Source: Octopus sinensis (Eukaryota). Taken from it: 64,000 nt of DNA. Position 1 is the stretch's first letter. Each line of letters opens with the position of its first letter. A program made the translations under genes and the position numbers. Below, in pieces: positions 1,941 through 58,416 of this stretch. The stretch covers positions 41,354,001 to 41,418,000 of the forward strand of contig NC_042999.1 of assembly GCF_006345805.1 (NCBI RefSeq), written 5' to 3'. Below the pieces are notes generated by a model that worked only from the letters and a program-made list of their open reading frames with translations, had not been told where the DNA came from and ran no database searches.

Positions 1941-2117
1941 TATGGTATCGCAGTCACTGATATTTTCTCTTTCTGTTTATCTCTATCACACACACACTCA
2001 CACATACACACAATTTGAGTGTCTTTCTTTACTCTATCTTTCACGTCTTTCAGGGTTTCATTATTATCTTCAACTCATTGTCCCTAAATAGCTTTAATAT
2101 CAATACTAATTTATTTT

Positions 2118-2600
2118 CTATTTCTTTACTGCCCACAAGGGGTTAAACACAGAGGGGACAAACAAGGACAGACAAACGGATCAAGTCGATTACATCGACC
2201 CCAGTGCGTAACTGGTACTTGATTTATCTAGGGCGGCGAGCTGGCAGAAACGTTAGCACGCCGGGCGAAATGCGTAGTCGTATTTCGTCTGTCGTTACGT
2301 TGTGAGTTCAAATTCCGCCGAGGTCGACTTTGCCATTCATCCTTTCGGGGCCGATAAATTAAGTACCAGTTACGCACTGGGGGTCGATGTAATCGACTTA
2401 ATACCTATGTCTGTCCTTGTTTGTCCCCTCTATGTTTAGCCCCTTGTGGGTAATAAAGAAATAGGTACTTAATTTATCGACCCCGATAGGATGAAAGGCA
2501 AAGTCGACCTCGGCGGAATTTGAACTCAGAACGTAACGACAGACGAAATACGGCTACGTATTTCGCCCGGCGGGCTAACGTTTCTGCCAGCTCGCCCCCT
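2118..2600 (-). mobile_element. SINE family D1 (outer copy), interrupted by a nested antisense D1 copy
   Basis: Head at 2600 and tail at 2118, flanked by the 15-bp TSD TACTAATTTATTTTC (2104-2118 and 2603-2617). Confidence 0.9.
2229..2463 (+). mobile_element. SINE family D1 (inner, nested copy)
   Basis: Complete head-to-tail copy flanked by TSD GGTACTT(G/A)ATTTATC (2214-2228 and 2464-2478). Confidence 0.9.
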
Positions 2601-2820
2601 TTTACTAATTTATTTTCATCTTTATTTTAATACATCATCGTTCTCCCATTTTTTTTTGTTCCCTAATCATAAGTTGTTCCCTCCGAATACTAACATTCTC
2701 CTCCTGTTCTTTCTTCTATGTAACCATTTCATATGCACGCACTTGCTCATTCACTCACTCAATCTTTATGTACATATTTATGAATCTATTTCCTTGTCAA
2801 TCTTTCAGTAAACGATCTAC

Positions 2821-2876: not shown

Positions 2877-2925
2877 CTCTATCTACCTGTGGCTCAGTCT
2901 CTCACCCCCTCTCTCTCTCTCTTTC

Positions 2926-2976
2926 TGTATGTATACATACTTACATATATATATATATATATGTATGTATGTATAC

Positions 2977-3009
<33 letters not shown>

Positions 3010-3695
3010 CATATATATATATGTATGTATGTATACATATATATATATGTATGTATGTATACATATATATATGTATGTATGTATAATATATATATATATA
3101 GTATGTATGTATACATATATATATATACGTATGTATGTATACATATTATATATGTATGCATACATATACATATGTATGTATGTATACATATATATGTATT
3201 ATGTATACATATATATATATGTATGTATGTATACATATATATTATATATGTTGTATGTATACATATATATATGTATGTATGTATACATATATAATGTATG
3301 TATGTATACATATATATATATATGTATTATACATATATATATATATGTGTATGTATACATATAATATATGTATGTATGTATATATATATATATATGTATG
3401 TATGTATACATATATATATGTGTATGTATACATATATATATTTACGTATATATACTATATATATGTATGTATGTATACATATATATATATTTATGTATGT
3501 ATACAATATATTTTATGTATGTATACATATATATATGTATGTATACATATATATATGTATGTATACATATATATATATGTATGTTATGTATACATATATA
3601 TATATTTATGTATGTATACATATATATATATATGTATGTATGTATACATATATATATATGTATGTATACATATATATATATATGTATGTATGTAT

Positions 3696-3730
<35 letters not shown>

Positions 3731-3768
3731 ACATATATATATATGTATGTATGTATACATATATATAG

Positions 3769-3800
<32 letters not shown>

Positions 3801-4845
3801 TATATAATATATATATATATAATGTATGTATGTATACATATATATATGTATGTATGTTATACATATATATATATGTATGTATATATATATATAGTATGCA
3901 TACATATATATATGTATGTATGTATATATATATATATGTATGTATGTATACATATATATATGTATGTATACATATATATATGTACGTATATATACATATA
4001 TATATATATGTGTATGTATACATATATATATATTTATGTATGTATACATATATATATATTTATGTATGTATACATATATATATATTTATGTATGTATACA
4101 TATATATATATGTATGTATACATATATATATATGTATGTATACATATATATATATGTATGTATGTATACATATATATATATGTATGTATGTATACATATA
4201 TATATATGTATGTATGTATACATATATATATATACGTATGTATGTATACATATATATATATACGTATGTATGTATACATATATATATATGTATGCATACA
4301 TATACATATGTATGTATGTATACATATATATGTATGTATGTATACATATATATATATGTATGTATGTATACATATATATATATATATATATATGTATGTA
4401 TACATATATATATGTATGTATGTATACATATATATATGTATGTATGTATACATATATATATATATATGTATGTATACATATATATATATATGTATGCATA
4501 CATATATATATGTATGTATGTATATATATATATATATGTATGTATGTATACATATATATATGTGTATGTATACATATATATATTTACGTATATATACATA
4601 TATATATGTATGTATGTATACATATATATATATATTTATGTATGTATACATATATATATTTATGTATGTATACATATATATATGTATGTATACATATATA
4701 TATATGTATGTATACATATATATATATGTATGTATGTATACATATATATATATGTATGTATGTATACATATATATATATATGTATGTATGTATACATATA
4801 TATATATGTATGTATACATATATATATATATGTATGTATGTATAC

Positions 4846-4879
<34 letters not shown>

Positions 4880-5392
4880 ACATATATATATATGTATGTA
4901 TGTATACATATATATATGTATGTATGTATACATATATATATGTATGTATGTATACATATATATATGTATGTATGTATACATATATATATGTATGTATGTA
5001 TACATATATATATGTATGTATGTATACATATATATATGTATGTATGTATACATATATATATATGTATGTATACATATATATATATGTATGCATACATATA
5101 TATATGTATGTATGTATATATATATATATATGTATGTATGTATACATATATATATATGTATGTATACATATATATATGTACGTATATATACATATATATA
5201 TGTATGTATGTATACATATATATATATTTATGTATGTATACATATATATATATTTATGTATGTATACATATATATATATTTATGTATGTATACATATATA
5301 TATATGTATGTATACATATATATATATGTATGTATACATATATATATATGTATGTATGTATACATATATATATATGTATGTATGTATACATA
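2926..5392. repeat. ~2.5-kb compound TA/TATG array (unit roughly TATGTATGTATACATATATA)
   Basis: Direct inspection; the source of the YIYI/MYV pseudo-ORFs. Confidence 0.97.
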
Positions 5393-7970
5393 GAAGAAGT
5401 TCTAACCACATTAGAACAACACATAAGTGTACTTCTCATGGGAGACTTCAATCTACCGAATGTCAGATGGCCCGAGGGCCTTTCTCTCCCAGGAATGACA
5501 AGATGTGAACGAGGACAGGCGAGGTCCCTCCTGAACCTCACCAACACCCTGTACATGGAGCAAGTAATACTCCAACCAACCAGAGCGGGTAACACACTGG
5601 ATCTCTGCTTCACAAATAATATGGATCTCATCCATAATGTGAAAGTGACACCGACACTACTCTCGGATCACAACATGGTAGAGCTGACCATGTACGGGCC
5701 AAAAGAGAGCACGGACATGCAGCCTACAAGAAACCCTCAGAGTCTTTCCAGCTTGAACTTCAATAAGGCAAACTGGAAACAAATTGAGAAAGAGATCCTC
5801 AAACAAAACTGGCCTGAATGTCTCTCCTCGCCGGACATCGACATGATACTTCAACAATTCATGTCTGTAATGCAAGCCATATGCTGCAGATGTGTCCCAG
5901 AGAGAAAGGCCACTGTACACAGGAACAAAATCCCCAGAGAGAGAAAAATTTTAATGAGACGGCGCACAAAAATCTCAAATCGCCTAAACAAACAAATTGA
6001 AAGCAGTGAAAAGTCCCGCCTGAAAATAAAACTGTTGGAAATTGAAAATTGTCTGCAACTCTCCCATGAGAAGGAAAGAGCAGACAAAGAAGCCTGGGCT
6101 ATAGACAACATAAAAACTAACCCCAGAGCTTTCTACAGGTATGCCAAAGAAACAGCTACGGTGCACTGTAGGATAGGGCCACTCCTTGAAAAGGATGGCA
6201 CACTCACAGGAAAACCAATGAGGGTAAGTGAAATACTGAATGAACAATTCAAGAGTGTTTTCACTCCACCCCTTGGGCATTTCCAAATCAGCAATCCAAC
6301 TGACTTTTTTACCACTGCAGATATAGAATCAGAGGCGGCGACGTTAAATTACATCGATATAAAGGAAGATGATGTAATAAAGGCTATAGATGAAATGAAA
6401 ATAGACTCAGCTATTGGCCCCGATGGATTCCCGGCAATCCTCCTAAAAGTATGTAAGAGAGTCTTAGCAAGACCACTGCAGTTCCTCTTTCAGAGCTTCC
6501 TTGCAGCTGGCAAACTTCCAAGAAAACTGAAGGAAGGTAAAATATGCCCTATTCATAAAGGAGGTAGCAGAGCGGAGGCCAAGAACTACAGACCTATCTC
6601 TCTGACCTCACACATCAGCAAGGTCATGGAACGAATAGTCAGAAGGAAACTAATCACCTTCCTTGAAGAAAATGACTTGCTGCCTGACACCCAACATGGT
6701 TCCGACCAGGAAGAAGCTGCTTAACTCAGCTCCTGCAGCACTATGACTGGGTGCTGAAACAACTGCTCAACCACTCAAATGTGGAAGTCATATATCTCGA
6801 CTTCGCAAAGGCCTTCGATAAAGTCGATCATGGAATGATATGTCACAAACTGCGTGATCTTGGCATAGTTGGAAAACTAGGAGAATGGCTTCACGACTTT
6901 CTGAAGAATAGAAGTCAGGTGGTAGTAGCCAATGGGGCCACTTCCATTAGCACGCAAATAGTGAGCGGTGTTCCACAGGGCACTGTTTTGGGACCACTAC
7001 TGTTCATAATGGCCCTCTCAGACATGCCCTCAGCCACGCGGAGAGCCACGATCACAAGTTATGCAGATGATACAAAAGTTTCACAGGCAATACAGAACCC
7101 TGAAGACACTAGGCACCTGCAATATGAGCTGGACGAAATTTACCAGTGGGCTGAAAAGAATAGCATGCAATTCAATGCTGAAAAGTTTCAAGCTTTATAC
7201 TATCAGCATGCAAAACTGAATGCAATACCCAAGGAATACACTGGACCCGGAGGGATTGCAATCCCAGAGGCACAATCAGTGCGTGACCTGGGTATTCACA
7301 TGAGTGATGACGCGACCTTTCATGTACATGTTGCTAAACTGACAGTGAAATGCAGACGCCTGGCTGGATGGATTCTTAGAACCTTTAGAACAAGAGAACA
7401 AGAAACATGATGGTCCTCTGGAAGACACTTGTCCTAAGTCACTTTGACTATTGCTCTCAGCTATGGTCACCATCCAGTGTCAAGTTGATCACAGAACTTG
7501 AGGCGATCCAACGAAGCTACACGAAGAAGATAGCCTCTATGCAGAATGTAAGCTACTGGGAAAGACTCAAGAGATTAAAATTATATTCCCTGGAGCGTAG
7601 GCGGGAAAGATATGCCATAATATACATCTGGAAGATCCTGGAGGGAAGTGTCCTGAACTTTGGCATCGAGAGTTACGCAAACGCCAGAACTGGGCGCCAC
7701 TGCGTGGTGCCTAGGACTCCAAACTTGCCATCAAGATGTAGGACAAGATTCTGTGATAGCCTGGGCTTCCGAGGCCCACAGCTCTTCAATATCCTCCCGA
7801 TGAACCTGAGAGACCTGCATGGGGTGGATACAGATGTCTTTAAAATGGAGCTGGATCTCTTCCTGTCAGGTGTCCCAGATGAACCAACTTCACGGCAGGA
7901 GGGGCAGATGAGGGCAGCTGCATCGAACTCTCTCATGCACCAAATAGCAGTTGCTAGAAAGCCTCCATGA
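5393..7970 (+). pseudogene. CR1 ORF2 (partial APE plus RT), 859 codons if two 1-bp deletions (~6700, ~7407) are repaired
   Basis: ORFs ending at 6724, 7410 and 7970 join into QHG(F)[11 protein letters not shown] and ET(M)MVLW with one base added at each break. No internal in-frame stops. Confidence 0.85.
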
Positions 7971-8063
7971 AGTGAAACCAAGTAGCAACACCAAATGGCG
8001 GTGCCCCAGCATGGCCACAGCTCATGAGCTGAAACTGGAATCAATCAATCAATCAATCAATCA
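5393..8063 (+). mobile_element. 5'-truncated CR1-clade LINE with (TCAA)n tail
   Basis: APE C-terminal motifs (GDFNLP, PTR..NTLDL, SDHN) and RT motifs ([40 protein letters not shown]). CR1-like C-terminus (LYSLERRRER), short 3' UTR and (TCAA)n at 8040-8063. Confidence 0.9.
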
Positions 8064-8445
8064 TACATATATATATATGTATGTATGTATACATATATAT
8101 ATATATACGTATGTATGTATACATATATATATATGTATGTATACATATATATATATATGTATGTATGTATACATATATATATATATGTATGTATGTATAC
8201 ATATATATATATATATGTATGTATGTATACATATATATATATATGTATGTATGTATACATATATATATATGTATGTATGTATACATATATATATATATGT
8301 ATGTATGTATACATATATATATATGTATGTATGTATACATATATATATGTATGTATGTATACATATATATGTATGTATGTATATATATATATATGTATGT
8401 ATGTATATATATATATATGTATGTATGTATATGTATATGTATATA
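8064..8445. repeat. TA/TATG array, continuation of the array left of the CR1
   Basis: Same unit as 2926-5392. Confidence 0.95.
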
Positions 8446-8784
8446 CATGCGTGTGTCTCAAGCATACAGATGTGTGTGAATCCCTGAAAGCAATACAATA
8501 AGTTGCCCTCCTACATGTGGAAGAGATTAATCTTGAATCACCTAATTGAATCCCTGCTATACCTGCTCTGTTGCTGCCAACTATCATCATATTACAATTT
8601 ATTTATCCCTAGGTGGCCAATACAAATCCTGTTGTGAATGGCGAAATTCTGTCATCGAAAATTGAAATAACTTTCAGGAGAAATAATAATTCAAATGACA
8701 GCTTCACATCTGAAGCCAATCCTTATACATATCCGTATACTCGAACTCAGCTATACACATATATAGAGAAACCGATAATAGGTT

Positions 8785-8901: not shown

Positions 8902-9917
8902 AGTTATGATAGATAGCTAGATAGGCATACAGACGTGTCAGAAAATGCAGTTAGCTGAGTTGATGAAGTGGCATTATTGAGACCACGTGTTAACAATTCA
9001 TTTTGTGCGACACGTGATGTACAACACGTAATGTAGACTTATATAATGCGCGTGTATATATATATATAGTTTGTCTTCCAGTCTGCCTTGTTGTCCATTG
9101 TTTTAAGGAGAAACCATCTGCTCATAAATTTAGAATCCTTCAACAGCCGTGCTATCGCCTTAACTGATAAGGAAGATGTTGAACAACATAGCACTAGATA
9201 TGCACACAAAAAAAAAAAGACTGAAGAATAGCAACTTAACTTGTTGCAGAAGTGGATTGCAATTTACTGCTAAAAGTAGGTGAGCTTTGCATAATTTGTG
9301 ATTGCTTAGCAGTATGAAGTTAAAGTGGAGTTCAAATTACGATACACTTTATATAATATGAAGAAATATCTTAGTTTATCATGGAATACCTTCATTTACT
9401 TCGATGCTTTTCATTACAGTGGTGTTTATCTAATTAAAAGCTCTGTTGTGCATACAAATCAAAATTATTTCACTTCATAGCATTCCATAGCAATAATTAC
9501 TCTGGAAGCGTTGCAAAGTGAAATAGTGAAGTGTGGGATTTTTTTTTTTTGTTACAATGGTAGCGAATTATATAGAAAGAATTATGTTTCAAATCTCATA
9601 GAAACTGATCGCTACTGATTCAGTTCTTTCGAAAGCGTGTTATATATTCTTGTCCGTTAGGATTGTCTAAGTAGTGAAGAAGTATCACGAATATCAGAAT
9701 GGTTGCATAGTTTCACGACATACGTAAGTAAAAATAGATAGATAGATAGATAGATAGATAGAATGATAGACAGACAGACAGGTAGGTAGGTAGGTGGGTG
9801 GGTGGGTATGTAGGTAGGTAGGTAAGAAGGTAGGTAGGTAGGTAGGGAGGGAGGTTGATTGATCCATTCATTTTGCGATTATGCTGTTGTGACGTGCGAT
9901 GATACGAAAAAGTAGAT

Positions 9918-10098
9918 AAGTTTCTTTATTGGCCACACAGGGCTGCACACAGATGGGACAAGTTACAAGGTAGAGCTTTTCTTTTGGGGGTTGAAAAAAA
10001 CAAAAAACAAAAGAAACGAAAAAAAAGGGATGGCGTAGGTTTTCGATCAAGAGGGATCGTAAAAGGGAAGAAAAGAACAAAAATAAATAAATAAATAA
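9918..10098 (-). mobile_element. 3'-terminal fragment of the Tx1-clade LINE
   Basis: tttctttattggccacacagggctgcacacagat...caaggtagagcttttctttt matches 50870-50935. It is adjacent to GATA/GGTA arrays at 9735-9850 and 10100-10158. Confidence 0.85.
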
Positions 10099-11347
10099 AA
10101 TAGATAGATGGATAGATAGATAGATACATAGATAGGTAGATAGGTAGGTAGGTAGGTACTTTGATTGATGCATTCATTTTGGGTTCATAATTTTGTGAAG
10201 AGCAATGATACAAAAAATGTTCTCGAAACTGTTAAATAAAGTCGCATAAGATGTATTCAGGGCAGATCTGTCATTTACATTTATTCGGAGACCTATTTGT
10301 CGAAAGACCTTTGGCTTATTACACTCCAAAGTTTCTGTCATTTCCTGTCTTAAATCAGGTATTGTTTATTTGGTATTTAACTCTAATTTTAAATTTCAAT
10401 AATAGCAGCAATTTATCAATTTACTTCGTGCCATGGTTCACTTACCATGAAAATCAATGACAATACTACATTGAAATTTTAAGTTGATGCCGTTACACGT
10501 CGAAATTACACGATTTTTAAAGGTTCTTATTTCAAGGTTCGGTGCATAAATTTATGTATTTTCACAATATAGTTTCATCATGTTAATGATTTCGATTGTA
10601 TTCTATATCTTTCAATGTTTAAAATCTAATGTAGAAACGTGTTTCATTGTGCGCCCGCACACACATACACACATATTTAAATATCGATAGATAGAAAGTT
10701 AGATAGATAGATAGATAGATAGATAGATACATTGTCAGAATCACGCTTGGAATATCAAATGATGTCGTTGAAATATACGCAACAGTGGCCGTACATACAG
10801 AACAAATGATACATATTCATGTTTATCATAATCTCTCTCTCTCTCTCTCCCATATATGTACATGCGTGTGTGTGTGTGTATGTATACTATGTATATATAT
10901 ACACACACACATGTGCGCGTATAAACACACCCACACCATTACACACACATATATATTTGCATATATTGGCTCAGAAATTGCATTTCTCTAAAATCCATAG
11001 TGGAATAAAATGCGCTGATTATTTATGTCCTCATTCCAATCAAATGGTTTCTGACTTAACGAATATGTCACGATTCTTAATAATGTCTCTATTCATCAAT
11101 CATTTCTTCTTTTGTGGATAATGTAAAACATCGGTATATTCCATTTTAATAGAAGCACTAATGCTTATTTAGAAAATGGTGTCACTATAATATATGATCG
11201 GAAGGGGCTATTAGACATTGTATTTTATTTTCCTTGAAAGATCAAATACGATTCCAGTTGTATTTCAACACAGAACCCAGGGGAGAGAAACTAAACATTT
11301 TGACTACATAATATGATGTTACATTGTTTTCTCTGCTACTATAACGC

Positions 11348-12654: not shown

Positions 12655-13334
12655 TATTTACATATGAGCCTGTATAGCGAAAGTATGATACACTAAAGAG
12701 AAAGGCTGTAGCAGTGAAAATTGTAACGTATGTGTATTCAATCAAATGTTAAGAAAGAGGAAGAGTTTTAATTGACCGTATATGAATATTCTGATCATGG
12801 TTGGTTGGGTTTTAATTATTTAGAGGTCAAGTAATTTATGAATAGATGTTGTATTAATTACCTGCAATCATACATATAGTGACCAGTTAATTACATTCTT
12901 GCTTATATATTTATATTAAAGATTACAGAAAATTCGGCACTATTCCTAGACGCTAAATCTACCCTTTGTTTTTTTTTCTCTCAAATCTAATAAAAATTAT
13001 ATTTAAAAAATCTTTTGACTGAAACTCGTGCTGACATTAAGTACGTACTGAAAGTTTTCCAGTTTTATTAGCGAGCTGAAGGTAATTGAACAGCTTCCAA
13101 CTGGAAATTCAAGCCAAATAGTGACCGCCCGATCGGAACTTCACTTCTGTTGTACCGAGTACACTTCGCTTCTGATTCAACGGTTTAATTTTCGACACGA
13201 CACGTGGGTGTTGTAGTTTGAAGAACGGGAATTAAAAAGTGTGGTATATTGACTTCCTCAGGTGTAAGTTAAGTAAAACAACTCTAACTAGAAAATGTCA
13301 AGATCTCGATATACACCGAAAGCTTATTCACTAT

Positions 13335-13550
13335 TATTGGTTTGAAATTCTCGCACAACGCCAGCAATTTCAGGGATAGGATGAGTCGATTACATCGACC
13401 CCAGTGTTCAACTGGTACTCATGTTATCTACTCCGAACGGATGATAGACAAAGACGACTTCAGGGGAATTTGAGCTGAGAATGTGAAGACGGACGAAATG
13501 CCGCTAAGCATTATGCTCAGCGTGCTAATGATTCTGTCACCTCGCCGCTT
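13335..13550 (-). mobile_element. SINE family D2 (D head and body, alternative tail), degenerate
   Basis: Similar to D1 through gtcgattacatcgaccccagtg, then a different tail also seen at 19690 and 48.3-48.9 kb. Confidence 0.75.
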
Positions 13551-19689: not shown

Positions 19690-19975
19690 TTTGGTTTCAA
19701 ATTTTGGCACAAGCCCAGCACATTTGTTGGATGGGTAAGTCGATTATATCAACTCTAATGCCGAAATTAAACCTATTTTATCAACACCCAAAAGGGGCTA
19801 AGCAAGGGGCTAAACACAGAGGGGACAAACAAGGACAGGCATAAGTATTAAGTCGATTACATCGACCCCAGTGCGTAACTGGTACTTAATTTATCGACCC
19901 CGAAAGGAGGAAAGGACGAAATACCGCAAAGCACTTTATACGGCGTGCTAAAAATTCTTCCACCTTGCCACCTTG
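19690..19975 (-). mobile_element. Composite of an older D2 SINE and a D1 3' part
   Basis: D2 tail at 19690-19795, D1 tail and body at 19803-19905, D head at 19915-19975. Confidence 0.65.
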
Positions 19976-27325: not shown

Positions 27326-27425
27326 NNNNNNNNNNNNNNNNNNNNNNNNNNNNNNNNNNNNNNNNNNNNNNNNNNNNNNNNNNNNNNNNNNNNNNNNNNN
27401 NNNNNNNNNNNNNNNNNNNNNNNNN
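27326..27425. other. Assembly gap (100 N)
   Basis: Run of exactly 100 N. Confidence 1.
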
Positions 27426-39790: not shown

Positions 39791-40099
39791 GGGTCAGTAA
39801 GAGAAGTATAAGTCAAGTACTGGTGTCAATCTTCACTCTTCACGAGTCACTCTTCACAAATTTTCAATCATATGACACTAATATTCGAAATAATAAATGA
39901 TAATAATGATGTTCTTTTTATCAGTCACTAAGAACTCACCAAATGGTCGAGTATGGTATAGGATGATACAAAGTGGTGTTACATAAAAACGCCATTAATT
40001 CCTATACAACGCCAAGGGGGAAATTCCACCGACTGCATTGCTCGACTGGCAAAGGGCTGTTAGCGGCTAACGGCAATTAAAATCCCAGGCGCCCTGCCT

Positions 40100-42830: not shown

Positions 42831-42842
42831 AGGTCTGAAGGT

Positions 42843-43040
42843 GAAATATGTAGTCGTATTTCGTCTGCCAATACGTTCTGAGTTCAAATTCCGTCGAGGT
42901 CGACTTTACTTTTCATCCTTTCGGGGTCGATAAATTAAGTACCAGTTACGCACTGGGGTCGATATAATAGACTTAATCCGTATGTCTGTCTTTGTTTGTC
43001 TCCTCTGTGTTTAGCCCCTTGTGCGTAGTAAAGAAATTGG
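42843..43040 (+). mobile_element. SINE family D1, 5'-truncated
   Basis: Near-identical to 2268-2463. Confidence 0.9.
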
Positions 43041-47840: not shown

Positions 47841-48319
47841 GTTACTATGTATTTTTGTACGAACAACTAACGAAATTTATGTAATTTTAATAAGCATAAA
47901 GAAAAACTTCAACAAGTCTATAACATATCAATTTTAAATGAAAATGTAACAGTCTTTACATAAGAACACTTTCGAAAAAAAATATCGAAAGATGAAAAAG
48001 AAGCAGCTTCCTAAAGCTTCTTGAATTAAAGTGGTATTCTCCTTTCGAGAGCGGGTAACTTTTTCCCTGTTAAAAAATCTAACATTTTAAAGTAATGTAT
48101 TTTTGTTACCAGTCAAATACCTTCAAAAATATTAGTACTAATGGGGACAGGATTGATATGAATATGATAGTAATTGTTGTTCTAAATATAGTTTATGATA
48201 CTATGGTACATTTCTTCTGAGAAATATTTGACACGCTTTTGTAGGATTGACATGTGACGTTTTGTCATGTGCGGTATATTTGTTGCAAATTTTGACACAA
48301 AACTTATTAGTTTCGGAAC

Positions 48320-49240
48320 AGTGGGTAAGTCAATTACATGGACCCCAGTGCTCAACTGGTATTTATTTTATTGATTCCAGAAGGATGAAATGCAAAGTCA
48401 AAATCGGCGGAATTTGAACCCAGACCGTAAATACGGACGAAAGGAAGCTAAGCATTTTGCCTTGGGTGTTAATGTTTCTGTTGACTCACCGCCATTTAAT
48501 AATGGTTTTACATTTTGGCATAAGACGATCAGTTTCGTGGGATGGAGTAAGTAAACCGATTATAACTATCCCAGTGTTTGACTGATACTTATTTTATCGA
48601 CCCCGAAAGGACGAAAGGCAAAGTCGACCTCGGTGACATTTGAACTCAGAACGTAAAGACATACAAAATGCCGCTACGCTTTTCGCTCAGCGTGCTAGCG
48701 ACTCTGCCAGCTTGCCGCTTTAAATATTCCTTTTTACTATAGGCACAAGGTCTAAAACTTTGGGAAGCGGACGCTTACGTTGATCCCAGTGCTCAACTGG
48801 TATTTATTTTATCGACTCCAAAAATGTTGAAAGGCAAAGTCGACCACGGCGACGTTTTAACTCAAAACGTTTAGACGAACGAAATGCCGCTAAGCTTTTG
48901 TTTTTTGCGGCATGCTAACGGGTTTGTCACATCGCTACACTGATGTACGATATAATATTAATTTCAAATTTTGACACAATGCCAGAAATTTTCAGTTAAT
49001 GTATTTTAGAATACCATTGTGGCTTTTCCGTGACGAATGCATTGCTTTTTTCGACCTCGAGCAATAAACGCAAAATTAATCCCGGCGGATTTTGAGCAAA
49101 TACCGGAATGTATAATATCTGACTCAATGATGATTCAGTCAACATTTCGGGGTCGATGAAATAAATACCAGGTGCGCACTTTGGTCGATGTAATCGACTA
49201 GACGCCTTTCCCCAAAATACCAGGCCTTCTACCTATACCA
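48320..49240. mobile_element. Cluster of at least four degenerate D-type SINE copies
   Basis: Minus copies at ~48320-48495, 48530-48720 and 48735-48940; a plus fragment at ~49140-49240. Confidence 0.75.
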
Positions 49241-50776: not shown

Positions 50777-50808
<32 letters not shown>

Positions 50809-50866
50809 ATAGCTAGCTAGCTAGATAGATAGATAGATAGATAGATACATAGATAGATACAAAGAT
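50777..50866. repeat. (GATA)n array at the 3' flank of the truncated Tx1
   Basis: Direct inspection. Confidence 0.95.
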
Positions 50867-50867
50867 A

Positions 50868-52122
50868 TGTTTCTTTATTAGCCACACAGGGCTGCACACA
50901 GATAGAACAAATTACAAGGTAGAGCTTTTCTTTTGAAGGTTTAAAAAAAAAAAAATTTAAAAAAATATTTTTTAAAAAATTTTTTAAAATAATAAAATAA
51001 CAAATAAAATAAAATAAAAAAGGGGGGTCGATCAAAAGGGATCGTAAAAGGAGAGAAAGAGGACAAAAAAGGGGGGGGGTTAAAAAAAATGGGGGAGAGG
51101 AAAAAAATTGATCAATAGGGATCGTTATCACAGAAATGTCAATATGAAGTGTAAAGGGGAGGACAGGTGAGGTTTACCCGTGGAAAGAAAAGCCTACGGA
51201 AAAGACCACGGTAACCTCGGTCAATGAAGTCACATGTTATATTTCTTTTTTTTTTTTGCAAATAAGCAACTCTCTGTATTAATTTTTACGGTTCATAGAA
51301 TCATAGTCAAGGTGGCTTCGTCATTCATACGTGCCATCCTTGCTACATTCACCCATCTTTTTTTAAAACATTCACTAGACAAAACTTGCCTCTCTACTCT
51401 CACTTTTTTCTTCAAGTGATACTTGAAAAAGTTGATGAGAGATTGACCAGAGAGGAAAGTGTTTGTCTCTAATCCTTTCAGACGCGTCCACCAGATACAT
51501 TCTTTCGCCATAGCCACAAGTATGATAAAAATAGCTCTTCCTTCCCGTTTGAAGGAAGGAGGCGTGACGATATTAACGATAGACTCGGCTGATAAACCGA
51601 CACGTCCCACACGTGACAGCAGTCGTTCGACATAAGCCCACAGGTGGGAAATTGCTGGACACTGCACGATTGCGTGCAGAGCGGTTTCGTCGCTCTGCCC
51701 GCATCTCGGGCAGGTCGGCCCCGTGTTTCTCGAGCCATGCCTATAGAGCTTATCCCGAACGGGTAGCGCTTCTCGGTAGCACCGCCAGGCCAGGGATCTC
51801 TGGAAGTTGTCCATAGGTCCCGGGCCGAAAGTCGTTTGAAACAGGCGGGTCAGGTATCCTCGTCGACGCCCAGGTTTGCCCCGAGCTCGTCGTCGTACCT
51901 CCCCTCCACTAATCCCCTATAGAATGCTTTGGTTGTGTTGAAGTCACTCAAGGTCGACCCGGGACGGCAGAGTTGCTTGAGAGCAACGCGACACTCGCGG
52001 TGCCATTCGCCCTTCTTCGGCCTCTTTTTGATCCACGACTGTAGTTCGGTCATGGAGACGAGTTGCGGGAATGCGTGCCTCACAAACGGCGACCACACCT
52101 GTTCACCGTCGTCTACATAGTG
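50868..52122 (-). mobile_element. 5'-truncated Tx1-clade LINE (sister subfamily)
   Basis: C-terminal ORF2 with CPRC...ET..H...C zinc motif, clearly homologous to but diverged from the adjacent full-length copy. One 1-bp deletion near 51857; 3' UTR ends AATAAAGAAA. Confidence 0.92.
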
Positions 52123-52176
<54 letters not shown>

Positions 52177-52237
52177 CTACCTAGATAGATAGATAGACAG
52201 ATAGATAGATAGGTAGATAGATAGGTAGATAGATAGG

Positions 52238-52267
<30 letters not shown>
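52123..52267. repeat. (GATA)n array between the two Tx1 copies
   Basis: Direct inspection. Confidence 0.95.
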
Positions 52268-52268
<1 letters not shown>

Positions 52269-52572
52269 CTTTCTTTTATTAGCCACACAGGGCTGAATAC
52301 AGAGGGGACAAATACAAATGCAGAGCTTTTCTTTTCGAGGGTGGAAAACAATTTAAAAAATGTAAGATTGCGATCAAAAGGGATCGAGAGGAGGAAAAAA
52401 AAGGAAAAAAAGGAAAATCGTGTATCACAGAAATAATGGTGTAAACATTGATATAACAAGATTGGGTTCGTCCGTGGGAAGAAAAGCCTACAGAAAAGAC
52501 CACGGGAACCCCAGTCAGGGAGGAAATAAACACATGAGGTCAAAAATGCTCTCTTTCTTTCTTTTTTACGAT

Positions 52573-55500
52573 CTACAGGATCATGCTCAAAATGGTTTCG
52601 TTACTAGCACGCACCATCTTTGCAACATTCACCCATCTTTTTTTGAATCTTTCGCGAGACAAAACTTCCCTCTCCATTCTCACCTTCCTTTTCAAGTGGT
52701 ACTTGAAAAAGTTGATGAGCGATTGGCCAGAGAGGTAAGTGTTTGTCTCTAATCCTTTCGCTCGAGTCCACCACACACATTCTTTCACCATGGCCACCAG
52801 TACGATGAAAACTGCCTTGCCTTCCCGGTTGAGGGAAGGGGGCGGAGCAATTCTAACGATAGACTCGGCCGATAGGCGGATTCGTCCCACACGTGACAGC
52901 AGCCGTTCGGCATAAGCCCACAGGTCGGAAATGGTTGGACATTGCACGAGTGCGTGCAGAACGGTTTCGTCGCTCTGACCGCATCTCGGGCAAGTCGGTC
53001 CAGTGTGTCTGGAACCGTGTCTGTAGAGCTTATCCCGAACAGGTAATGCTTCTCGATAGCACTGCCAGGCCAGGGATCTTTGGTGATTGTTCATAGGTCC
53101 CGGCCCGAAAGTTGTCCTGAACAGGCGGGTCAGGTGTTCCTCGTCGACGCCCAGACTCTGCCCGAGTTCGTCGTCGCACCTCCCCTCCACTAATCCTCTA
53201 TAGAATGCCTTTGTTGTGATGGAGTCGCACAAGTTCGATCCCGGACGGCAGAGTTGCTTGAGAGCAACGCGACACTCGCGGTGCCATTCGCCTAGCCTCG
53301 GTCTCTGCTTGATCCATGACTGTAGTTCGTCCAAGGAGACGAGCTGCGGGAAAGCGCGCCGCACAAAAGGCGACCACCCCTGTTCACCGTTGTCTATGAA
53401 GCGCCGGAGATGTCGCAGTCTCAGCGCATGTCTGCGCATCATCAACCACGGCATGCCCAGCCCTCCATTTAGCGGGTGTTGGCAGCAAATGGATCGCCTA
53501 ACCATCGGAACGTTTCCCTTCCACAAGAAGCGGAAGAGTATGCGTTCCAGTTTGGTGATGGTAGGGTCGGGACAAGGCACGACGGTCAGACGATACTCGA
53601 TGACGGATGCGATGTACGCGTTCGCCACCTCCGCCCGACCTTTTAGGGATAGCTTTCTCTCAGTCCATTTCTGGTGAGAGAAGCCACCCTAGTCGTTATC
53701 TCGCCCCAGTTCTTCTCCATTTGGAGGTCCGGACCGAACCAGACCCCGAGCAATTTAACCGGTCCGTCCGTCCAGCGTCCCACGATGGAGACGCTGTTGG
53801 ACGGCATGGGCTTGCTTCTCCAGGTGCCGAGCCGCAAGCCCACTGACTTTTCCCGGTTAATTTTTGCTCCCGTTACCGCTTCGTATTCTTTCAGTGTCTC
53901 GCCGACCAGCTCGATGTGCTCGTAGCTCGACACTATGACGGTGACGTCATCCGCGTATGCAGACACGCTCCTCCCGCATCCCAGCTCTCGTGGGATGCCC
54001 CTCAGCGTCGCCAGTTTCCGCAGTAGTGGCTCAAGAGTCAGTACATACAGCAGCGATGAGAGGGGGCATCCCTGACGAACCGAACGCATGATGTTAAAAG
54101 GTCTGGATAGATGACCATTTACGCGAACTACTGAGCGGATGCCGCTGTATAAGGCAGCGATCCAACCGCGGAAAACTGGACCGAAACCAGCCGCTTTGAG
54201 GACAGCCTCCAAGTAGTGATGGTCTACCCTATCGAAGGCTTTTGATTGATCCAAATTGATCAGCGCCCCACCCATGCCAGGATTTTTAACTACCCTGTCT
54301 ATGATGTAGCGCATCAGATGGAGGTTGTCATGAATACTTCTACCCGGCACGGCGCATGTTTGCGCCTTGTCGATTAGTTTCTTGATGACAAGCGCCAACC
54401 TCTCGGCTAACACCTTGGCCAAAATTTTCAAATCTGCGTTGAGCAGAGTGATGGGCCTGAAATTATCTATGACGTCCCCCTTGTTTGGGTCTTTCTTGAT
54501 CAGTGCCACTGCTCCTCGCTTTACAAAAGCAGGAATACTCCCGTTCTGCTGCCAGTTGCAGTAGACAGCTGCCAAGACGCCTCCAAACAAGTCTGGCATA
54601 TGAAAATAAAATTCGTAGGGCAGACCATCCAAGCCTGGTGACTTGTCTCTCGCGCAGCCTACCATCGCATCCTGTACATCCGCAGCTGTGATAGGCTTTT
54701 CACAAGACTCCACCTCCCTTGCTGAGAGTCGTGGCAAGGCATGCAGGTAGGCACTAAAGTCCACTCTGCTTTCTGACTCACCACTTGTCCCAAACAGTTG
54801 GGTGAAGTGTTGTTGAAAAACCCCACACATCCTTTTAGGCTCGAGCAATTCGCGCCCCTGTTCATCTATAAGAGACTTGATGGTGGCTCTGTTGCCTCGT
54901 TGCGTCTCCACCACTCGGGCCTCTTGGGCGGCTCCAACTCCTTCGTTCCTCAGAGCACGCATCCTAGCTCTGACAACGCATCCCTCGTGTTTGGCGTTGA
55001 GGTGTTGGTCGAGGGCCAATCTCGCCGCCAGTACGTTGGACGCGATGCCAGTTCTAAGTGCCTCTTCTAAAACCTTAACTAATTCTCCCTCTATTCTATT
55101 TCGTTTAATGCTAAGGCTCTACTGTATCTGACTGATTCTGCTTTAATCGCTTTTTTTAGGGCATACCACCATCTGTTGTTGATGATGGTACCCGTCAAAG
55201 CTCTCTTAACTAATGTGCTGATCCGGTCCCTGTAAACCTGTCGTGCTGTAAAAGACGCGTTCAGTTTCCAGTAACCAGGACCCTGCCTATGTGTCTTATC
55301 TAAGTCAAGTGTACAAGTCACAAACTTGTGATCTGTGTAACTGACTATATGAAATTGTGGACAACCTACACTATTTTTATCTATTGTCCTACAGAATACT
55401 CTGTCTAAGTATGATCTGGACGACCCGATGCGGTTACTCCATGTCCACATTGGCACATTCGGGTGGTCCAGTCGGTACCTGTCAGACAGTTGGAAACGTC

Positions 55501-56008
55501 TGAGCAGGTCTTTGAGGCATTTGCATCCCCTTCTATTGCTATCTCTGCCCACGTAGTCTAGATGCGTGTCCAGGGTGGCATTCCAATCCCCCACTAAAAG
55601 TAAAGGACGAGACGTTCCCATGAAAGACTCTAGACGTCGAAAGAAATCTGGTCGGCCTGTTAAGGACGGAGCATAAACTGCTATCAGTCGAAAAGCACAC
55701 TCATTGCTGCCATCGACATCCAAAACGACCAGCCTACCCTCCGGGTCTAGGAAATTTGCTCTTACTTTGAGATCCAGACTCTTCCGGATAAGCACCGCGG
55801 TGCCACCTCCGCCCATTCTCGGTAGACACGGAGAAAAATAAATGTTGAAATGTGTACCGAAAATGTGCTGGAGTGCCCGCAAGCTGTGGAGTCTGGTCTC
55901 ACTGATGGCTATGATATTCAGATTTAGTGACTTGATGTCATTTAACAGGTAGCCTTGTTTCCAAGGCGACCCCAAGCCACGTACATTTATACTACCTATT
56001 CTGAGCAT
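52573..56008 (-). CDS. Tx1 ORF2p (APE endonuclease, RT, C-terminal zinc motif), 1145 aa after repairing two 1-bp deletions (~55105, ~53673)
   Basis: GSINVRGL, ISETRL, VYAP, GDWNA, YLDRVF, TDHKFV, GPGYWKLN; PGLDG, FRPITLLN, DQSKAFDRVDH, QGCPLS, YADD; LSLKGRAEVAN, GGLGMP, CPRCGQSDETVLHALVQC. Confidence 0.9.
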
Positions 56009-56050
56009 GTTCCGATAAAAGTGCAAAAAAGGAAAAGGAGAGAGAAAAGG

Positions 56051-58198
56051 TTACTTGTTTTTCGAAAGTTCTTTGTCTTTCACCTCACGGTCTTCTTCTA
56101 TGAGGCTTTTATACAGTTTTTTCGATGAGTACTTTTGAAATCTCCCTACTGCATCAGGGTAAGAGATTTCAGGGTGCTGTATGTGTTCTGTGTCACGTGT
56201 ATTATTTTAATGTGTTGTGGTGGTGTTGTATGTGGGTGGTTACTTGTTTTTATGTCGTTTTCAGTAATGTTAGTGTTTGACCTAATGTGTTCCATTAGGT
56301 CGTGGTTGTTTGTGTTTATGGCTGTCAACATTTTTGGGGGGTTTGATGATGGTGTGTTTGTGTTGATGTGTGTGTTTTCTGTGGATGTTTTTGTTTCGGG
56401 AGTGGTGTATCTTCCCGCTTTGTTTGTTATTTTTTCTTTTCTTTTTTTTCCCCTTTTTCTTCTCCCCCCTGTGGCTATTTGCCAATCTTCCGTGTCTTCT
56501 TCGTCTAATGACAGATCAGACGAATCGGAGTCTGGAAGAGGGAAAGAATTGGGGTCTATTGTCGACTGTGTTGGTTTTGTTGTTGGTGTTGGTTGGTGAG
56601 CGTTTGGTTGTGGTGTATGCGGTTTTGGATGTGGGGTTTGGGTATTTTGTGTTTGAGTGATTGTGGGTATTGTTGTGTTGTTTAGGGTCTCAATTTTGTG
56701 GGGATTTGGAGTTGTAATTGTTTTTCTTCATTTTTGCTGGGTGTCTTTTTGGCAGATGTCCTTGGTTTGGGAGTTGGTATATTCTTGGTTGTTGTTGTTG
56801 GTGATGCTGCTTCTGTTCTTGGTGCTGCAGTTGGTGTGGTTGTTTGTTTGGTGAGGTTTGTTCCTGCAAAAAGTGGTGTGGGTAGTAAACCTTGTTTATT
56901 TGTTTTTGTTTCCGGCTGCTGTTGTTGTTGCTGTTGTTTTCTTGCGGCAGATTTGCAGTCTTTTTTGAGGTGTTGCTCACTGCCGCATATGTAGCAACGT
57001 GGTCTTCTGCCATCGACGACCACATATAACTTGTGGTCGTCTGATACACATATCTGGGTGGGTATTTTTTTAATATCCTCATGATGTATATGTAGAAGAA
57101 ATTCTATTTTTTGTCCCACCCAGTTTTTATGCTCTGTGACTGTGGTTTCCAAAATAGTATAATTCGCCATTTTTACGCATAAGGCCTTTACAAGCCATAG
57201 ACTATTGGCTATTTTGGGGACATTGTTTAGAGTGATCTTAGTCACTTTCTGTCCCCGATAGCTTGGTGTAAGTTGGAGTTCATCTGAGTGAAGAGTTAGC
57301 GTTGAGAAATGTCTAGCTAACTCTTCGGTGTAGAAAACAACTTGTATGTGGGCAAATTTGTTCCACCAGGTTACATATTCTTTGTGATTCCAGATGGGTT
57401 TCAAGCACTTCTCTATTTTGCTTGTGTTGGCCTTCTCTGGGATTTTTGTTTTTTGTTAACTATTTTATAAATGATTGTTCGTCTTTTTTCATTTTCCAAA
57501 ATATCTTCTGGTATGTTAATTTTTACTATACCTTCTGATTCTGTTATTTTGATGTTCGTGTCCTGTATTTGTTGAGCCGTAAAGTATATTGTTGTTTTTT
57601 TTTCTTTAATCGCCTCAGCGAAATTTGTTGTTGTTTTGTTATTGTTGTTGCTTGTGGTGATGTTGTTGTTGGCTGCAGTTTGTAAAATTGGTGTGTTTGG
57701 TTCGATCGTGCTAGTAGGAAGGGGTGGAAAATTGCCTGCGTACTTTAGTCCTGCACTAGGGCAAAGTTCGACATTTCGTTTGCTTGTCGTCGTTATTTTT
57801 TCACTTGTTGGTGATGGAGTGAGCAGTGGTTGAAGGGAATTGTTGTTGTCGTCGTTGTTGTTGTTGTTATTGTCGTTCTTGGTGACGGCGGTGGTGTTGG
57901 TAGTATTAGTAGCATTGACGGCACGGTCTTTGGTGGCGGTGATGGTGATGTTGTTATTGGTGGCGATATCTTTAGTAGGGATAGCAGTTTTAGTAGCAGA
58001 TTCTGCCATGGTGTTGGTGGTGGTGGTGGACTCACTGATGGTGTTGACGGTGCTTGGCCTTGCGACCTTTGTTTTGTATTTGTTGCTGTTGGTGGTGGTG
58101 GAGTTGTCAGGTTCGGCGTATGCTAACAGAGCATCCTGTTTTTCTGTTTCTGCGTCACGCTTCACTTGCAACTCAGCCTCGTGGTGGTCAGTGGCCAT
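56051..58198 (-). CDS. Tx1 ORF1p, 716 aa after repairing three 1-bp deletions (~57445, ~56695, ~56206)
   Basis: Zinc knuckle CYICGSEQHLKKDC preceded by VVVDGRRPR, with long Thr/Asn/Gln/Pro-rich flanks. The frames join at A-runs. Confidence 0.8.
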
Positions 58199-58416
58199 TT
58201 TGGAAATAAAATGGCTAAATGAAACCACGAAGGCTATGAGAATTTTTTCTTTTAAATTTTGCCCACAAGGGGCAAAATTTTGTGTCGATATTTATCAAAG
58301 GTTTACAGTGGATGTTGTTGCACAACTTTTAAGCACAAAATGTTTGTCAATATACACTTTTAAATGGTCAAAATAAATGATTACCTTCGGAGCTGAAACG
58401 ACATCACATCCGTCAG

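What the first reader, a model, noticed from the sequence alone, without database searches (positions are those of the whole stretch)
2420..2463. SINE D1 3' tail matches the 3' end of the Tx1 LINE
The D1 tail TTTGTCCCCTCTATGTTTAGCCCCTTGTGGGTAATAAAGAAA aligns with the Tx1 terminus TTTGTCCCCTCTGTATTCAGCCCTGTGTGGCTAATAAAAGAAA (reverse complement of ~52270-52312). My manual alignment gives 6 mismatches and 1 gap in 43 nt. Both carry a small hairpin before the A-rich end. Shared 3' ends are the established signature of a SINE borrowing a LINE's RT, so this Tx1 family may mobilise D1. Oddly, D1 copies here (2118, 2229, 42843) are not in GATA arrays, so SINE and LINE targeting may be uncoupled.
Basis: partly seen in the sequence, partly recalled or inferred. 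Interest (0 to 1): 0.75.

Follow-up and report, generated by a model that had tools for sequence, protein, structure and literature searches.

The report
Octopod SINE shares a LINE tail
A short mobile element (SINE) in this cephalopod DNA ends in the same ~48-base tail as a family of long mobile elements (LINEs), which is the usual sign that the SINE borrows the LINE's copying enzyme; the match is real, but it points to a whole group of related LINEs rather than to the one copy in the window.

Summary
Window 2420-2463 is the 3' end of a 235-bp SINE (2229-2463). It aligns with the 3' end of a 6.1-kb LINE (52269-58416, minus strand) with 6 mismatches and 1 gap in 43 columns (z = 12.6; 0 of 5000 shuffles reach the score). 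Two more 5'-truncated LINE copies (50869-52122, 9920-~10100) and three more SINE copies carry the same tail. The similarity survives in consensus sequences, stops about 48 nt from the end, and lies at the very 3' terminus of both elements.

The tail is a module shared by a whole LINE group, not only by the copies in (GATA)n arrays. In Argonauta hians and in metagenome contigs it also ends relatives that sit in (ATT)n arrays, and one LINE copy inserted outside any array. In Argonauta, that non-array copy has the tail closest to the local SINEs. SINE copies in both species lie outside arrays, with 13-17-bp target duplications. The SINE therefore most likely depends on this LINE group, but the driving family is unresolved.

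The hairpin is predicted but weak. Tx1 membership could not be tested, only L1/Tx1-group membership. This is a new example of a known phenomenon.

The parts
2420..2463 (+). 3' tail of SINE copy a (the finding): TGTCCCCTCT(A/G)TGT box, GCCC-CTTGT-GGGT hairpin, AATAAAGAAATA end
2229..2463 (+). Full-length SINE copy a (235 bp, TAGGGCGGCGAGC...AAAGAAATA), inserted into an older copy of the same SINE
2214..2228 (+). 5' copy of the 15-bp target-site duplication of SINE copy a (GGTACTTGATTTATC); the 3' copy is at 2464-2478 (GGTACTTAATTTATC)
2119..2602 (-). Older SINE copy b, split by copy a (2119-2213 and 2479-2602); its 15-bp target-site duplication GAAAATAAATTAGTA is at 2104-2118 and 2603-2617
42840..43037 (+). 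SINE copy c, 5'-truncated at about consensus position 36, tail TTTGTCTCCTCTGTGTTTAGCCCCTTGTGCGTAGTAAAGAAAT
19803..19972 (-). SINE copy d, with an internal deletion and a partly duplicated, degraded tail; it abuts a fragment of the second SINE family
52269..58416 (-). LINE copy A, full length (6.1 kb). ORF1 is in two pieces (58228-57413, 57404-56682, weak CCHC knuckle). ORF2 is in three frames (endonuclease 56026-55091, RT 55019-53643, zf-RVT 53628-52573), so the copy is defective. The tail is at 52269-52319
50869..52122 (-). LINE copy B, 5'-truncated within the ORF2 C-terminal region. It belongs to a different subfamily (about 79% DNA identity and 77-80% protein identity to copy A) and has the same tail
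9920..10100 (-). LINE copy C, 3' UTR only (about 180 bp), same tail; GATA/TACC-type arrays lie on both sides
52123..52267 (.). (AGAT)n array 3' of LINE A and 5' of LINE B. Companion arrays are at 58417-58496 (5' of A, 20 perfect units), 50777-50867 (3' of B), and 10100-10155 and 9734-9793 (around C)
58259..58277 (-). Hairpin in the 5' UTR of LINE A, TTTTGCCCCTTGTGGGCAA, matching the SINE tail hairpin at 17 of 19 positions

Best explanation
Window 2420-2463 is the LINE-derived tail of a 235-bp SINE. The tail is homologous to the terminal ~48 nt of an L1/Tx1-group LINE lineage of octopods. The shared module has three parts: a TGTCCCNTCTGTGT box, a 4-bp G+C stem with a CTTGT or CTGTGT loop, and AATAAAGAAA.

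The likely mechanism is 'stringent' template recognition. The LINE's ORF2 protein binds this 3' module on RNA, nicks the target with its APE-type endonuclease, and primes reverse transcription from the nick. A SINE transcript carrying the same module is copied in trans, which leaves 13-17-bp target-site duplications.

The module is common to several LINE families of the lineage: families in (GATA)n arrays, families in (ATT)n arrays, and at least one copy inserted outside arrays. The SINE copies are dispersed, so the family that actually drives the SINE is more likely a relative that is not array-restricted than the GATA-array copies seen in the window.

Shown: the tail homology, its conservation in the LINE lineage, the target duplications, and the insertion sites. 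Inferred: protein recognition of the tail, mobilisation in trans, and which family is the driver.
For: (1) Tail match: 37 of 43 columns, z 12.6, 0 of 5000 shuffles. It is present in 3 LINE copies and 4 SINE copies and is kept in the consensus.
(2) The match sits at the exact 3' terminus of both elements. There is no similarity upstream of about 48 nt.
(3) The tail is constrained in the LINE. The last ~66 nt of copies B and C differ at 4 positions (my count on the alignment), while the low-complexity rest of the 3' UTR is about 60-70% identical. The same module ends relatives with 60-77% protein identity in Argonauta hians (L002, L004, L006) and in JGI contig L001.
(4) The LINE has APE endonuclease, RT and zf-RVT domains. 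Its best solved-structure match is human L1 ORF2p (E 1e-39), against R2 at 1e-20.
(5) The SINE copies look retrotransposed. There are two 15-bp target duplications in the window, one from a SINE-in-SINE insertion that shows the empty site. Copy c is 5'-truncated. Argonauta SINE copies have 13-17-bp duplications.
(6) Argonauta SINEs share body and tail with the window SINE (73-77% identity). About 30 tail-bearing elements lie in 35 kb of L002 and L006.
(7) A second SINE family in the window has the same head and body but a different tail, as expected if tails are exchangeable LINE-derived modules.
(8) An Argonauta LINE copy with this tail has a 17-bp target duplication outside any array, and its tail is the best match to the Argonauta SINE tail (score 58 against 42 for the GATA-array LINE).
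Against: Only 4 SINE and 3 LINE copies come from the host genome itself, and no non-array LINE of this lineage is seen in the window. Within the window the GATA-array LINE is the best and only match (score 54). The non-array candidate rests on a single Argonauta copy, which is composite and carries two 3' UTRs. The hairpin is not thermodynamically distinctive, and covariation amounts to one compensatory event. LINE copy A is defective, with at least 3 frame changes. Overlap in age between SINE and LINE activity could not be measured. Mobilisation in trans is inferred from analogy and is not shown.
Confidence: 0.7

Rival explanations
1. The GATA-array LINE family seen in the window is itself the driver of the SINE. 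Array restriction of the LINE would come from pairing of a (UAUC)n read-through at the 3' end of the LINE RNA with the nicked (GATA)n strand, not from the endonuclease. A SINE RNA without that repeat would then land wherever the enzyme nicks.
For: Within the window this family gives the best match to the SINE consensus tail (score 54, 37/43) and shares the upstream TGTCCC(C/A)TCTGTGT box. Argonauta SINEs end ...GAAATCTAT, which is the GATA-array LINE junction GAAATCTATCTATC cut after about one repeat unit. Three Argonauta SINE target duplications and one LINE duplication start with TAT or CTAT, or TGT in one 5' copy (my reading of the flanks printed). This is the same short motif found at every unit of the array. 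The 5' UTR of LINE A carries a near-exact copy of the SINE hairpin (17/19, 0 of 2000 shuffles).
Against: In 8 full-length or tail-bearing SINE copies examined in detail, and in about 20 further tails, none lies inside a GATA array. All 5 GATA-family LINE tails do (3 in the window, 2 in L004). In published cases, SINEs that depend on target-specific LINEs share the target; an example is SINEU with Tx1-Mar (PMC4494074, which also states that target choice is mainly set by the endonuclease). The two window SINE duplications start with G, not TAT. The Argonauta SINE tail matches the non-array LINE copy better.
Confidence: 0.25
2. The shared tail is a fossil of an old acquisition. The SINE took it from an ancestral LINE of this lineage before Octopus-like and Argonauta lineages split. 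Today the SINE is either dead or is copied by another machinery that does not read this tail.
For: Body and tail are shared between the window SINE and Argonauta SINEs, so the acquisition is old. Window SINE copies differ from each other by K2P 0.08-0.17, so none is very young. LINE copy A is defective.
Against: The tail remains the best conserved part of the SINE copies and of the LINE 3' UTRs. One SINE copy inserted into another, which shows activity spread over time. A repeat annotation of Octopus vulgaris lists L1-Tx1 among recently active LINE classes and reports a joint SINE and LINE expansion (PMC13282606). The other LINE in the window has an unrelated 3' end.
Confidence: 0.1
3. The similarity is chance or convergence, for example two A-rich ends that both contain a polyadenylation-like AATAAA.
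For: AATAAAGAAA is low in complexity, and the hairpin is short and energetically unremarkable.
Against: The match covers 43-50 nt, of which only 10 are AATAAAGAAA. No shuffle out of 5000 reaches the score. The pattern outside the A-rich part finds only SINE and LINE tails (6 sites against 0 expected). The same relation recurs in a second species.
Confidence: 0.01

Closest known systems
UnaSINE1 / UnaL2 of the eel (stringent-type SINE/LINE pair; Kajikawa and Okada 2002, as cited in PMC4494074 and PMC3747384)
   Same: A tRNA-type SINE and a LINE share a short 3' tail with a small conserved stem-loop. The LINE's reverse transcriptase is thought to recognise that tail, and for the eel pair this has been shown.
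   Different: UnaL2 belongs to the L2 clade and ends in (TGTAA)n repeats. Here the LINE is of the L1/Tx1 group, ends in AATAAAGAAA, and several families sit in microsatellite arrays. Nothing has been tested experimentally here.
SINEU / Tx1-Mar of crocodilians (Kojima 2015, PMC4494074)
   Same: A SINE proposed to be mobilised by target-specific LINEs of the Tx1 clade.
   Different: In that case the argument is a shared insertion target (Mariner-N4_AMi). Here the argument is a shared tail, and the array target is not shared. The SINEU head is derived from snRNA.
SINEs with L1-clade tails (the maize and sorghum SINEs with monocot L1, and SINEX-3_CR with L1-1_CR of Chlamydomonas; Ohshima, PMC3747384 and PMC3472496)
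   Same: An L1-group LINE with a conserved 3' stem-loop shared with a SINE. This is a rare class: 3 of 58 catalogued pairs.
   Different: Those are from plants and algae and end in poly(A). This case is from an animal (cephalopod), has no poly(A) run, and some LINE families are microsatellite-specific.
Microsatellite-specific Tx1-clade LINEs: Kibi (TC)n, Koshi (TTC)n, and the crocodilian (TTCC)n/(TTTC)n families (Kojima and Fujiwara 2004, as summarised in PMC4494074)
   Same: APE-type LINEs found only inside a particular microsatellite.
   Different: The targets here are (GATA)n and, in relatives, (ATT)n. The summary in PMC4494074 mentions no partner SINE with a shared tail for those families.
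Octopus SINEs OK, OR1 and OR2 (Ohshima and Okada 1994; OR1 is listed as a CORE-SINE in PMC4824008)
   Same: tRNA-derived SINEs of octopus. The window SINE may be one of them or a relative. 'tRNA-Core' SINEs dominate octopus genomes (PMC8967140).
   Different: I had no access to their sequences, so identity was not tested. I found no statement of their LINE partner in the searchable literature.

Membership tests
SINE (non-autonomous retroposon transcribed by RNA polymerase III) | Short, non-coding, present in multiple dispersed copies | tested here: met
   The unit is 235 bp. Four copies with this tail, plus head or body fragments, are dispersed over 64 kb. No ORF is present.
SINE (non-autonomous retroposon transcribed by RNA polymerase III) | Head derived from tRNA, 5S or 7SL RNA, with an internal promoter (A and B boxes) | tested here: inconclusive
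   ARAGORN finds no tRNA. Rfam gives no tRNA match even at E <= 10. By eye there is a B-box-like GAGTTCAAATTCC and complementary ends GGCGGCG...CGCCG, but these were not scored.
SINE (non-autonomous retroposon transcribed by RNA polymerase III) | Target-site duplications and 5' truncation, typical of target-primed reverse transcription | tested here: met
   There are two 15-bp duplications, one with the empty site known from the SINE consensus. Copy c is 5'-truncated. Argonauta copies have 13-17-bp duplications.
SINE/LINE partner pair with a common tail (criterion of Ohshima and Okada) | Sequence similarity confined to the 3' ends, at the termini of both elements, in the same genome | tested here: met
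   37/43 identity, z 12.6. The similarity ends about 48 nt from the terminus, and both elements are in the same 64-kb window.
SINE/LINE partner pair with a common tail (criterion of Ohshima and Okada) | Similarity holds between consensus sequences, and no other LINE matches better | tested here: inconclusive
   The match holds in the consensus. The other LINE in the window does not match. Sister families of the same lineage in Argonauta match equally well or better. The host's full set of LINEs was not available.
SINE/LINE partner pair with a common tail (criterion of Ohshima and Okada) | Overlapping periods of activity, and mobilisation in trans | not testable with these tools
   There are too few copies for age distributions (SINE K2P 0.08-0.17 between copies).
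Tx1 clade of non-LTR retrotransposons | ORF2 with an APE-type endonuclease, reverse transcriptase and a C-terminal zinc-binding motif; ORF1 present | tested here: met
   Pfam matches Exo_endo_phos, RVT_1 and zf-RVT in ORF2, and a weak zf-CCHC in ORF1. These features are shared with the L1 clade and are not diagnostic on their own.
Tx1 clade of non-LTR retrotransposons | RT domain groups with Tx1 elements in a phylogeny (RTclass1-type test) | not testable with these tools
   No Tx1 reference sequence could be obtained. Three protein searches returned no hit named as Tx1. The best solved-structure relative is human L1 ORF2p (E 1e-39) against R2 (1e-20), which shows L1/Tx1-group membership only.
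Tx1 clade of non-LTR retrotransposons | Target-specific insertion (frequent in the clade, not universal) | tested here: met
   All 3 window copies and both L004 copies are followed by (TATC)n, and the full-length copy has the array on both sides. Relatives are in (ATT)n arrays.
Stringent-type 3' recognition element (conserved stem-loop in the tail) | A stem-loop supported by folding energy or by compensatory changes | tested here: inconclusive
   The same nested fold is predicted in the SINE and LINE tails, but with z -1.1 to +1.4 against shuffles. RNAalifold gives 4 pairs at -0.62 kcal/mol and one pair with a G-C to C-G switch, which is confined to the window SINE, so it counts as one event.

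The most novel reading that the evidence does not exclude
The large SINE load of octopods would be driven by one L1/Tx1-group LINE lineage that reads a small 3' stem-loop followed by AATAAAGAAA. This would include both SINE families seen here, whose different tails both carry a CTTGT-loop hairpin. [quoted passage not shown] The same enzyme would then give array-restricted LINE copies and dispersed SINE copies.
Probability: 0.15. Interest if true: 0.7.

Novelty: new member of a known kind. Interest (0 to 1): 0.42.

Why it matters
SINEs make up about a tenth of octopus genomes (11.6% in O. vulgaris, PMC13282606), and their expansion is regarded as octopus-specific (PMC8967140). I found no paper in the searchable library that names the LINE partner of an octopus SINE. 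Tail-sharing pairs within the L1/Tx1 group are rare: 3 of 58 catalogued pairs (PMC3747384). A cephalopod pair would therefore add an animal case of 'stringent' recognition in the group that also contains mammalian L1, whose recognition is relaxed.

The contrast between array-bound LINE copies and dispersed SINE copies carrying the same tail offers a natural test. It can show whether target specificity in such LINEs lies in the endonuclease or in RNA-target pairing. The limits are plain: the phenomenon itself is textbook, the evidence is comparative only, and curated repeat libraries that I could not consult may already record the pair.

Tried and rejected
1. Exact-pattern scans for the tail (GSCCYKTGTGGSYAATAAAGAAA) in metagenome and viral contigs found nothing. 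A protein-guided scan of metagenome contigs also found nothing. No further copies from the host genome could be obtained.

2. I looked for a host-gene exon in the window that could lead to annotated octopus loci. The ORFs of 90 aa or more listed between 10200 and 50700 look, by eye, like translated repeats or low-complexity sequence.

3. tRNA detection in the SINE head failed with ARAGORN and with Rfam at both thresholds.

4. The Tx1-versus-L1 decision failed. The three protein searches returned almost only unnamed proteins. The SINEU paper has no supplementary sequences held. The PDB has L1 and R2 but no Tx1.

5. The hairpin was not supported by folding energy, and only marginally by covariation.

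6. The other LINE in the window (about 5400-8040, ending in (AATC)n) was rejected as a partner: z -0.3.

7. I considered that the tail might be a SINE inserted into the LINE 3' end. I rejected this because only the last ~48 nt match, and all LINE copies in two species carry the tail at their exact terminus.

8. The second SINE family's tail against the LINE 5' UTR gave only marginal scores (15-490 of 2000 shuffles reach them).

9. Age overlap was not measurable. The three LINE copies belong to diverged subfamilies (K2P 0.25-0.58 between them).

Full report
**What is at the coordinates**

Window 2420-2463 (+) reads TTTGTCCCCTCTATGTTTAGCCCCTTGTGGGTAATAAAGAAATA. It is the 3' end of a 235-bp repeat at 2229-2463. 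The copy is bounded by a 15-bp target-site duplication, GGTACTT(G/A)ATTTATC, at 2214-2228 and 2464-2478. It lies inside an older, oppositely oriented copy of the same repeat (2119-2213 plus 2479-2602). That older copy has its own 15-bp duplication, GAAAATAAATTAGTA, at 2104-2118 and 2603-2617. The host of the inner insertion is itself a SINE copy, so the empty site is known and the ends of the inner element are exact.

Two further copies carry the tail. One is at 42840-43037 (+) and is 5'-truncated. The other is at 19803-19972 (-), with an internal deletion and a degraded tail. The four copies differ from one another by K2P 0.08-0.17. ARAGORN and Rfam find no tRNA in the head. Its tRNA origin therefore rests only on a B-box-like motif seen by eye.

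**The LINE**

The reverse complement of 52269-58416 is a 6.1-kb non-LTR retrotransposon.
- It lies between (AGAT)n arrays at 52123-52267 and 58417-58496.
- ORF2 has an APE-type endonuclease (Exo_endo_phos), a reverse transcriptase (RVT_1) and a zf-RVT domain. ORF1 has a weak CCHC knuckle.
- The reading frames are broken into five pieces, so this copy is defective.
- The best solved-structure relative of the RT is human L1 ORF2p (E 1e-39), with R2 at 1e-20. The endonuclease also matches the L1 endonuclease best.

Two 5'-truncated copies exist. Copy B is at 50869-52122, followed by (ATAG)n at 50777-50867. Copy C is at 9920-~10100, between GATA/TACC-type arrays. Copies A and B are about 79% identical in DNA and 77-80% in protein, so they belong to different subfamilies. 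All three copies sit in GATA-type arrays.

**Checking the observation**

| Comparison with the SINE tail | Result |
|---|---|
| LINE copy A | score 49; shuffles 14.8 +/- 2.7; z 12.6; 0 of 5000 reach it |
| LINE copy B | z 10 |
| LINE copy C | z 12 |
| Other LINE in the window (~5400-8040, ends in (AATC)n) | z -0.3 |

With a four-copy SINE consensus the match is 37/43 to copy A. It extends upstream to CCTTGT in copies B and C, at 39-40 of 50 columns including a 3-nt gap. There is no similarity further upstream. The match lies at the exact 3' terminus of both elements.

**The tail is a constrained module of a LINE lineage**

Within the window, the terminal ~66 nt of copies B and C differ at 4 positions (my count on the alignment). 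The rest of the 3' UTR is low-complexity and only about 60-70% identical. The exception is a second conserved hairpin, CGATCCCT(T/C)TTGATCG.

The closest proteins in the public collection come from the octopod Argonauta hians (70% identity in the RT) and from short JGI and ENA contigs. Their DNA shows the same ending:
- L004 has two LINE tails followed by (TATC)n.
- L001 and two LINEs in L006 end ...CCCTTGTGG(C/T)(C/T)AATAAAAGAA(A)T followed by (ATT)n.
- L002 has a LINE (2886-8650) ending CGGCCCTTGTGGCTAATAAAGAAATC. It is flanked by a 17-bp target duplication, TATTTTTAAAATTTGTA, and is not in an array.

The tail therefore belongs to a group of families with different insertion habits.

**SINEs with this tail in a second species**

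Argonauta loci L002 and L006 (35 kb together) contain about 30 tail-bearing elements. Many are SINEs whose body and tail align with the window SINE at 73-77% identity, while their heads differ.
- They end ...GGCCCTTGTGGCTAATAGAGAAATCTAT.
- Their target duplications are 13-17 bp.
- None is inside a GATA array.
- In the three SINE copies and the one LINE copy where the duplication can be read, it starts with TAT or CTAT, or TGT in one 5' copy. This is my reading of the flanks printed.
- The SINE end GAAATCTAT equals the GATA-array LINE junction GAAATCTATC... cut after about one unit.

In the window, the two SINE duplications start with G.

**Which LINE is the partner?**

Scores of SINE tails against LINE tails:

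| SINE tail | LINE tail | Score |
|---|---|---|
| Octopus SINE consensus | Window GATA-array LINE, copy A | 54 |
| Octopus SINE consensus | Argonauta (ATT)n LINE | 52 |
| Octopus SINE consensus | Argonauta non-array LINE copy | 42 |
| Argonauta SINE | Argonauta non-array LINE copy | 58 |
| Argonauta SINE | Argonauta GATA-array LINE | 42 |

The SINE loop, CTTGT, is the version found in Argonauta and JGI LINEs. The window LINE has CTGTGT instead. The tail therefore identifies the lineage but not the family.

Published cases of SINEs that depend on target-specific LINEs show a shared target; SINEU with Tx1-Mar is an example. The same paper states that target choice is set mainly by the endonuclease (PMC4494074). 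The dispersed SINE copies thus argue for a driver that is not array-restricted. The opposite view remains open. In that view the GATA-array family is the driver, and its array restriction comes from pairing of a 3' (UAUC)n read-through with the target. It has some support from the TAT-initial duplications and the GAAATCTAT end. I give it about 0.25.

**The hairpin**

Every tail folds into the same nested structure: a 4-bp G+C stem, a 5-6-nt loop, and outer pairs between TCTGTGT and AATAAAGA.
- The energies are within the range of shuffles (z -1.1 to +1.4).
- RNAalifold keeps 4 pairs at -0.62 kcal/mol.
- One pair switches from G-C to C-G, but only in the window SINE, so it is a single event.

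The hairpin is plausible and conserved in sequence, but it is not demonstrated as a structure.

**Clade**

The domain order, the L1-like RT and endonuclease, and the microsatellite-specific insertion fit the Tx1 clade as described in the literature (PMC4494074, PMC3747384). 'L1-Tx1' is an annotated and recently active class in octopus genomes (PMC13282606, PMC8967140). I could obtain no Tx1 reference sequence, so phylogenetic membership is untested.

**Comparison with what is known, and novelty**

A shared SINE/LINE tail is a classic signature. The eel pair UnaSINE1/UnaL2 is the experimentally proven model. Pairs in the L1 group are rare, 3 of 58 in Ohshima's survey (PMC3747384). SINEU/Tx1-Mar is a precedent for a Tx1-dependent SINE, argued from a shared target rather than a shared tail (PMC4494074). 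I found no paper in the held library that names a LINE partner for an octopus SINE. Curated repeat libraries, which I could not consult, may list it.

I rate this a new member of a known kind, of moderate interest. The most interesting element is the confirmed contrast, in two species, between array-bound LINE copies and dispersed SINE copies carrying one tail.

**Limits**

Only 64 kb of the host genome and 47 kb... more precisely 56 kb of Argonauta DNA (L002, L004, L006) were available. Scans of metagenome and viral collections found nothing. Age overlap, genome-wide insertion logos and any functional test remain to be done.

Noticed in passing
window 2104-2617: A SINE copy (2229-2463, +) is inserted into an older, opposite-strand copy of the same SINE (2119-2213 plus 2479-2602). 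Each has its own 15-bp target-site duplication, so the family was active over an extended period.
   Followed up: yes
window 13330-13548 (-), 48270-48493 (-), 48500-48718 (-), ~48950-49000 (-), 19690-19770 (-): A second SINE family shares the head and body of the first (76-83% identity, up to ...GGGGTCGATGTAATCGACT) but has a different tail, ...GAAATTGCTGGCCTTGTGCCAAAATTTGAAACCAAT. That tail also contains a short G+C stem with a CTTGT loop followed by an A-rich run, so it may derive from another member of the same LINE lineage. No LINE with this tail was found in the window or in the loci.
   Followed up: partly
window 58259-58277 (-): The 5' UTR of the full-length LINE contains TTTTGCCCCTTGTGGGCAA, which matches the SINE tail hairpin at 17 of 19 positions (0 of 2000 shuffles reach the score). 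A similar GCCC-TCTTT-GGG motif lies at a comparable distance upstream of ORF1 in the Argonauta LINE (L002 ~3055-3075). This may be a second binding site for the element's proteins, or chance.
   Followed up: partly
window 52371-52386, 51029-51044, 10044-10059 (all -): A second conserved hairpin, CGATCCCT(T/C)TTGATCG, lies in the otherwise fast-evolving, T-rich 3' UTR of all three LINE copies, about 100-160 nt upstream of the 3' end.
   Followed up: no
window ~5400-8040 (+), with 2945-5392 and 8063-8445: An unrelated LINE (Exo_endo_phos_2 and RVT_1 domains) ends in (AATC)n at 8039-8063. It is flanked by very long TA/TATG-type microsatellites; 2945-5392 is one 2.4-kb array that produces spurious long ORFs.
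   Followed up: partly
window 40000-41500 (-): A degraded relative of the GATA-array LINE (29-43% protein identity over endonuclease, RT and C-terminal pieces), with no recognisable tail.
   Followed up: no
window 27326-27425: A run of 100 N, which is an assembly gap.
   Followed up: no
L002 2886-8650 (Argonauta hians): This LINE carries two 3' UTRs in tandem. The first tail ends at ~8290, then come ~105 bp of other sequence and a second partial UTR ending at 8650. The whole is flanked by one 17-bp target duplication, which looks like a 3' transduction through a downstream truncated copy.
   Followed up: partly
L001 2018-2105; L006 ~4848 and ~11190: Sister LINE families with 60-76% protein identity end in the same tail but are followed by (ATT)n instead of (TATC)n. 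The lineage has switched microsatellite target while keeping its tail.
   Followed up: partly
protein P0200: A protein deposited as 'MAG: zinc-binding domain-containing protein [Herbaspirillum sp.]' is 62% identical over the whole C-terminal part of this LINE's ORF2. It is most likely animal (mollusc) DNA binned into a bacterial metagenome-assembled genome.
   Followed up: no
window 59919-60760: A minisatellite with 51-108-bp periods built from TCATCG-like units. It gives long ORFs on both strands that are not genes.
   Followed up: no
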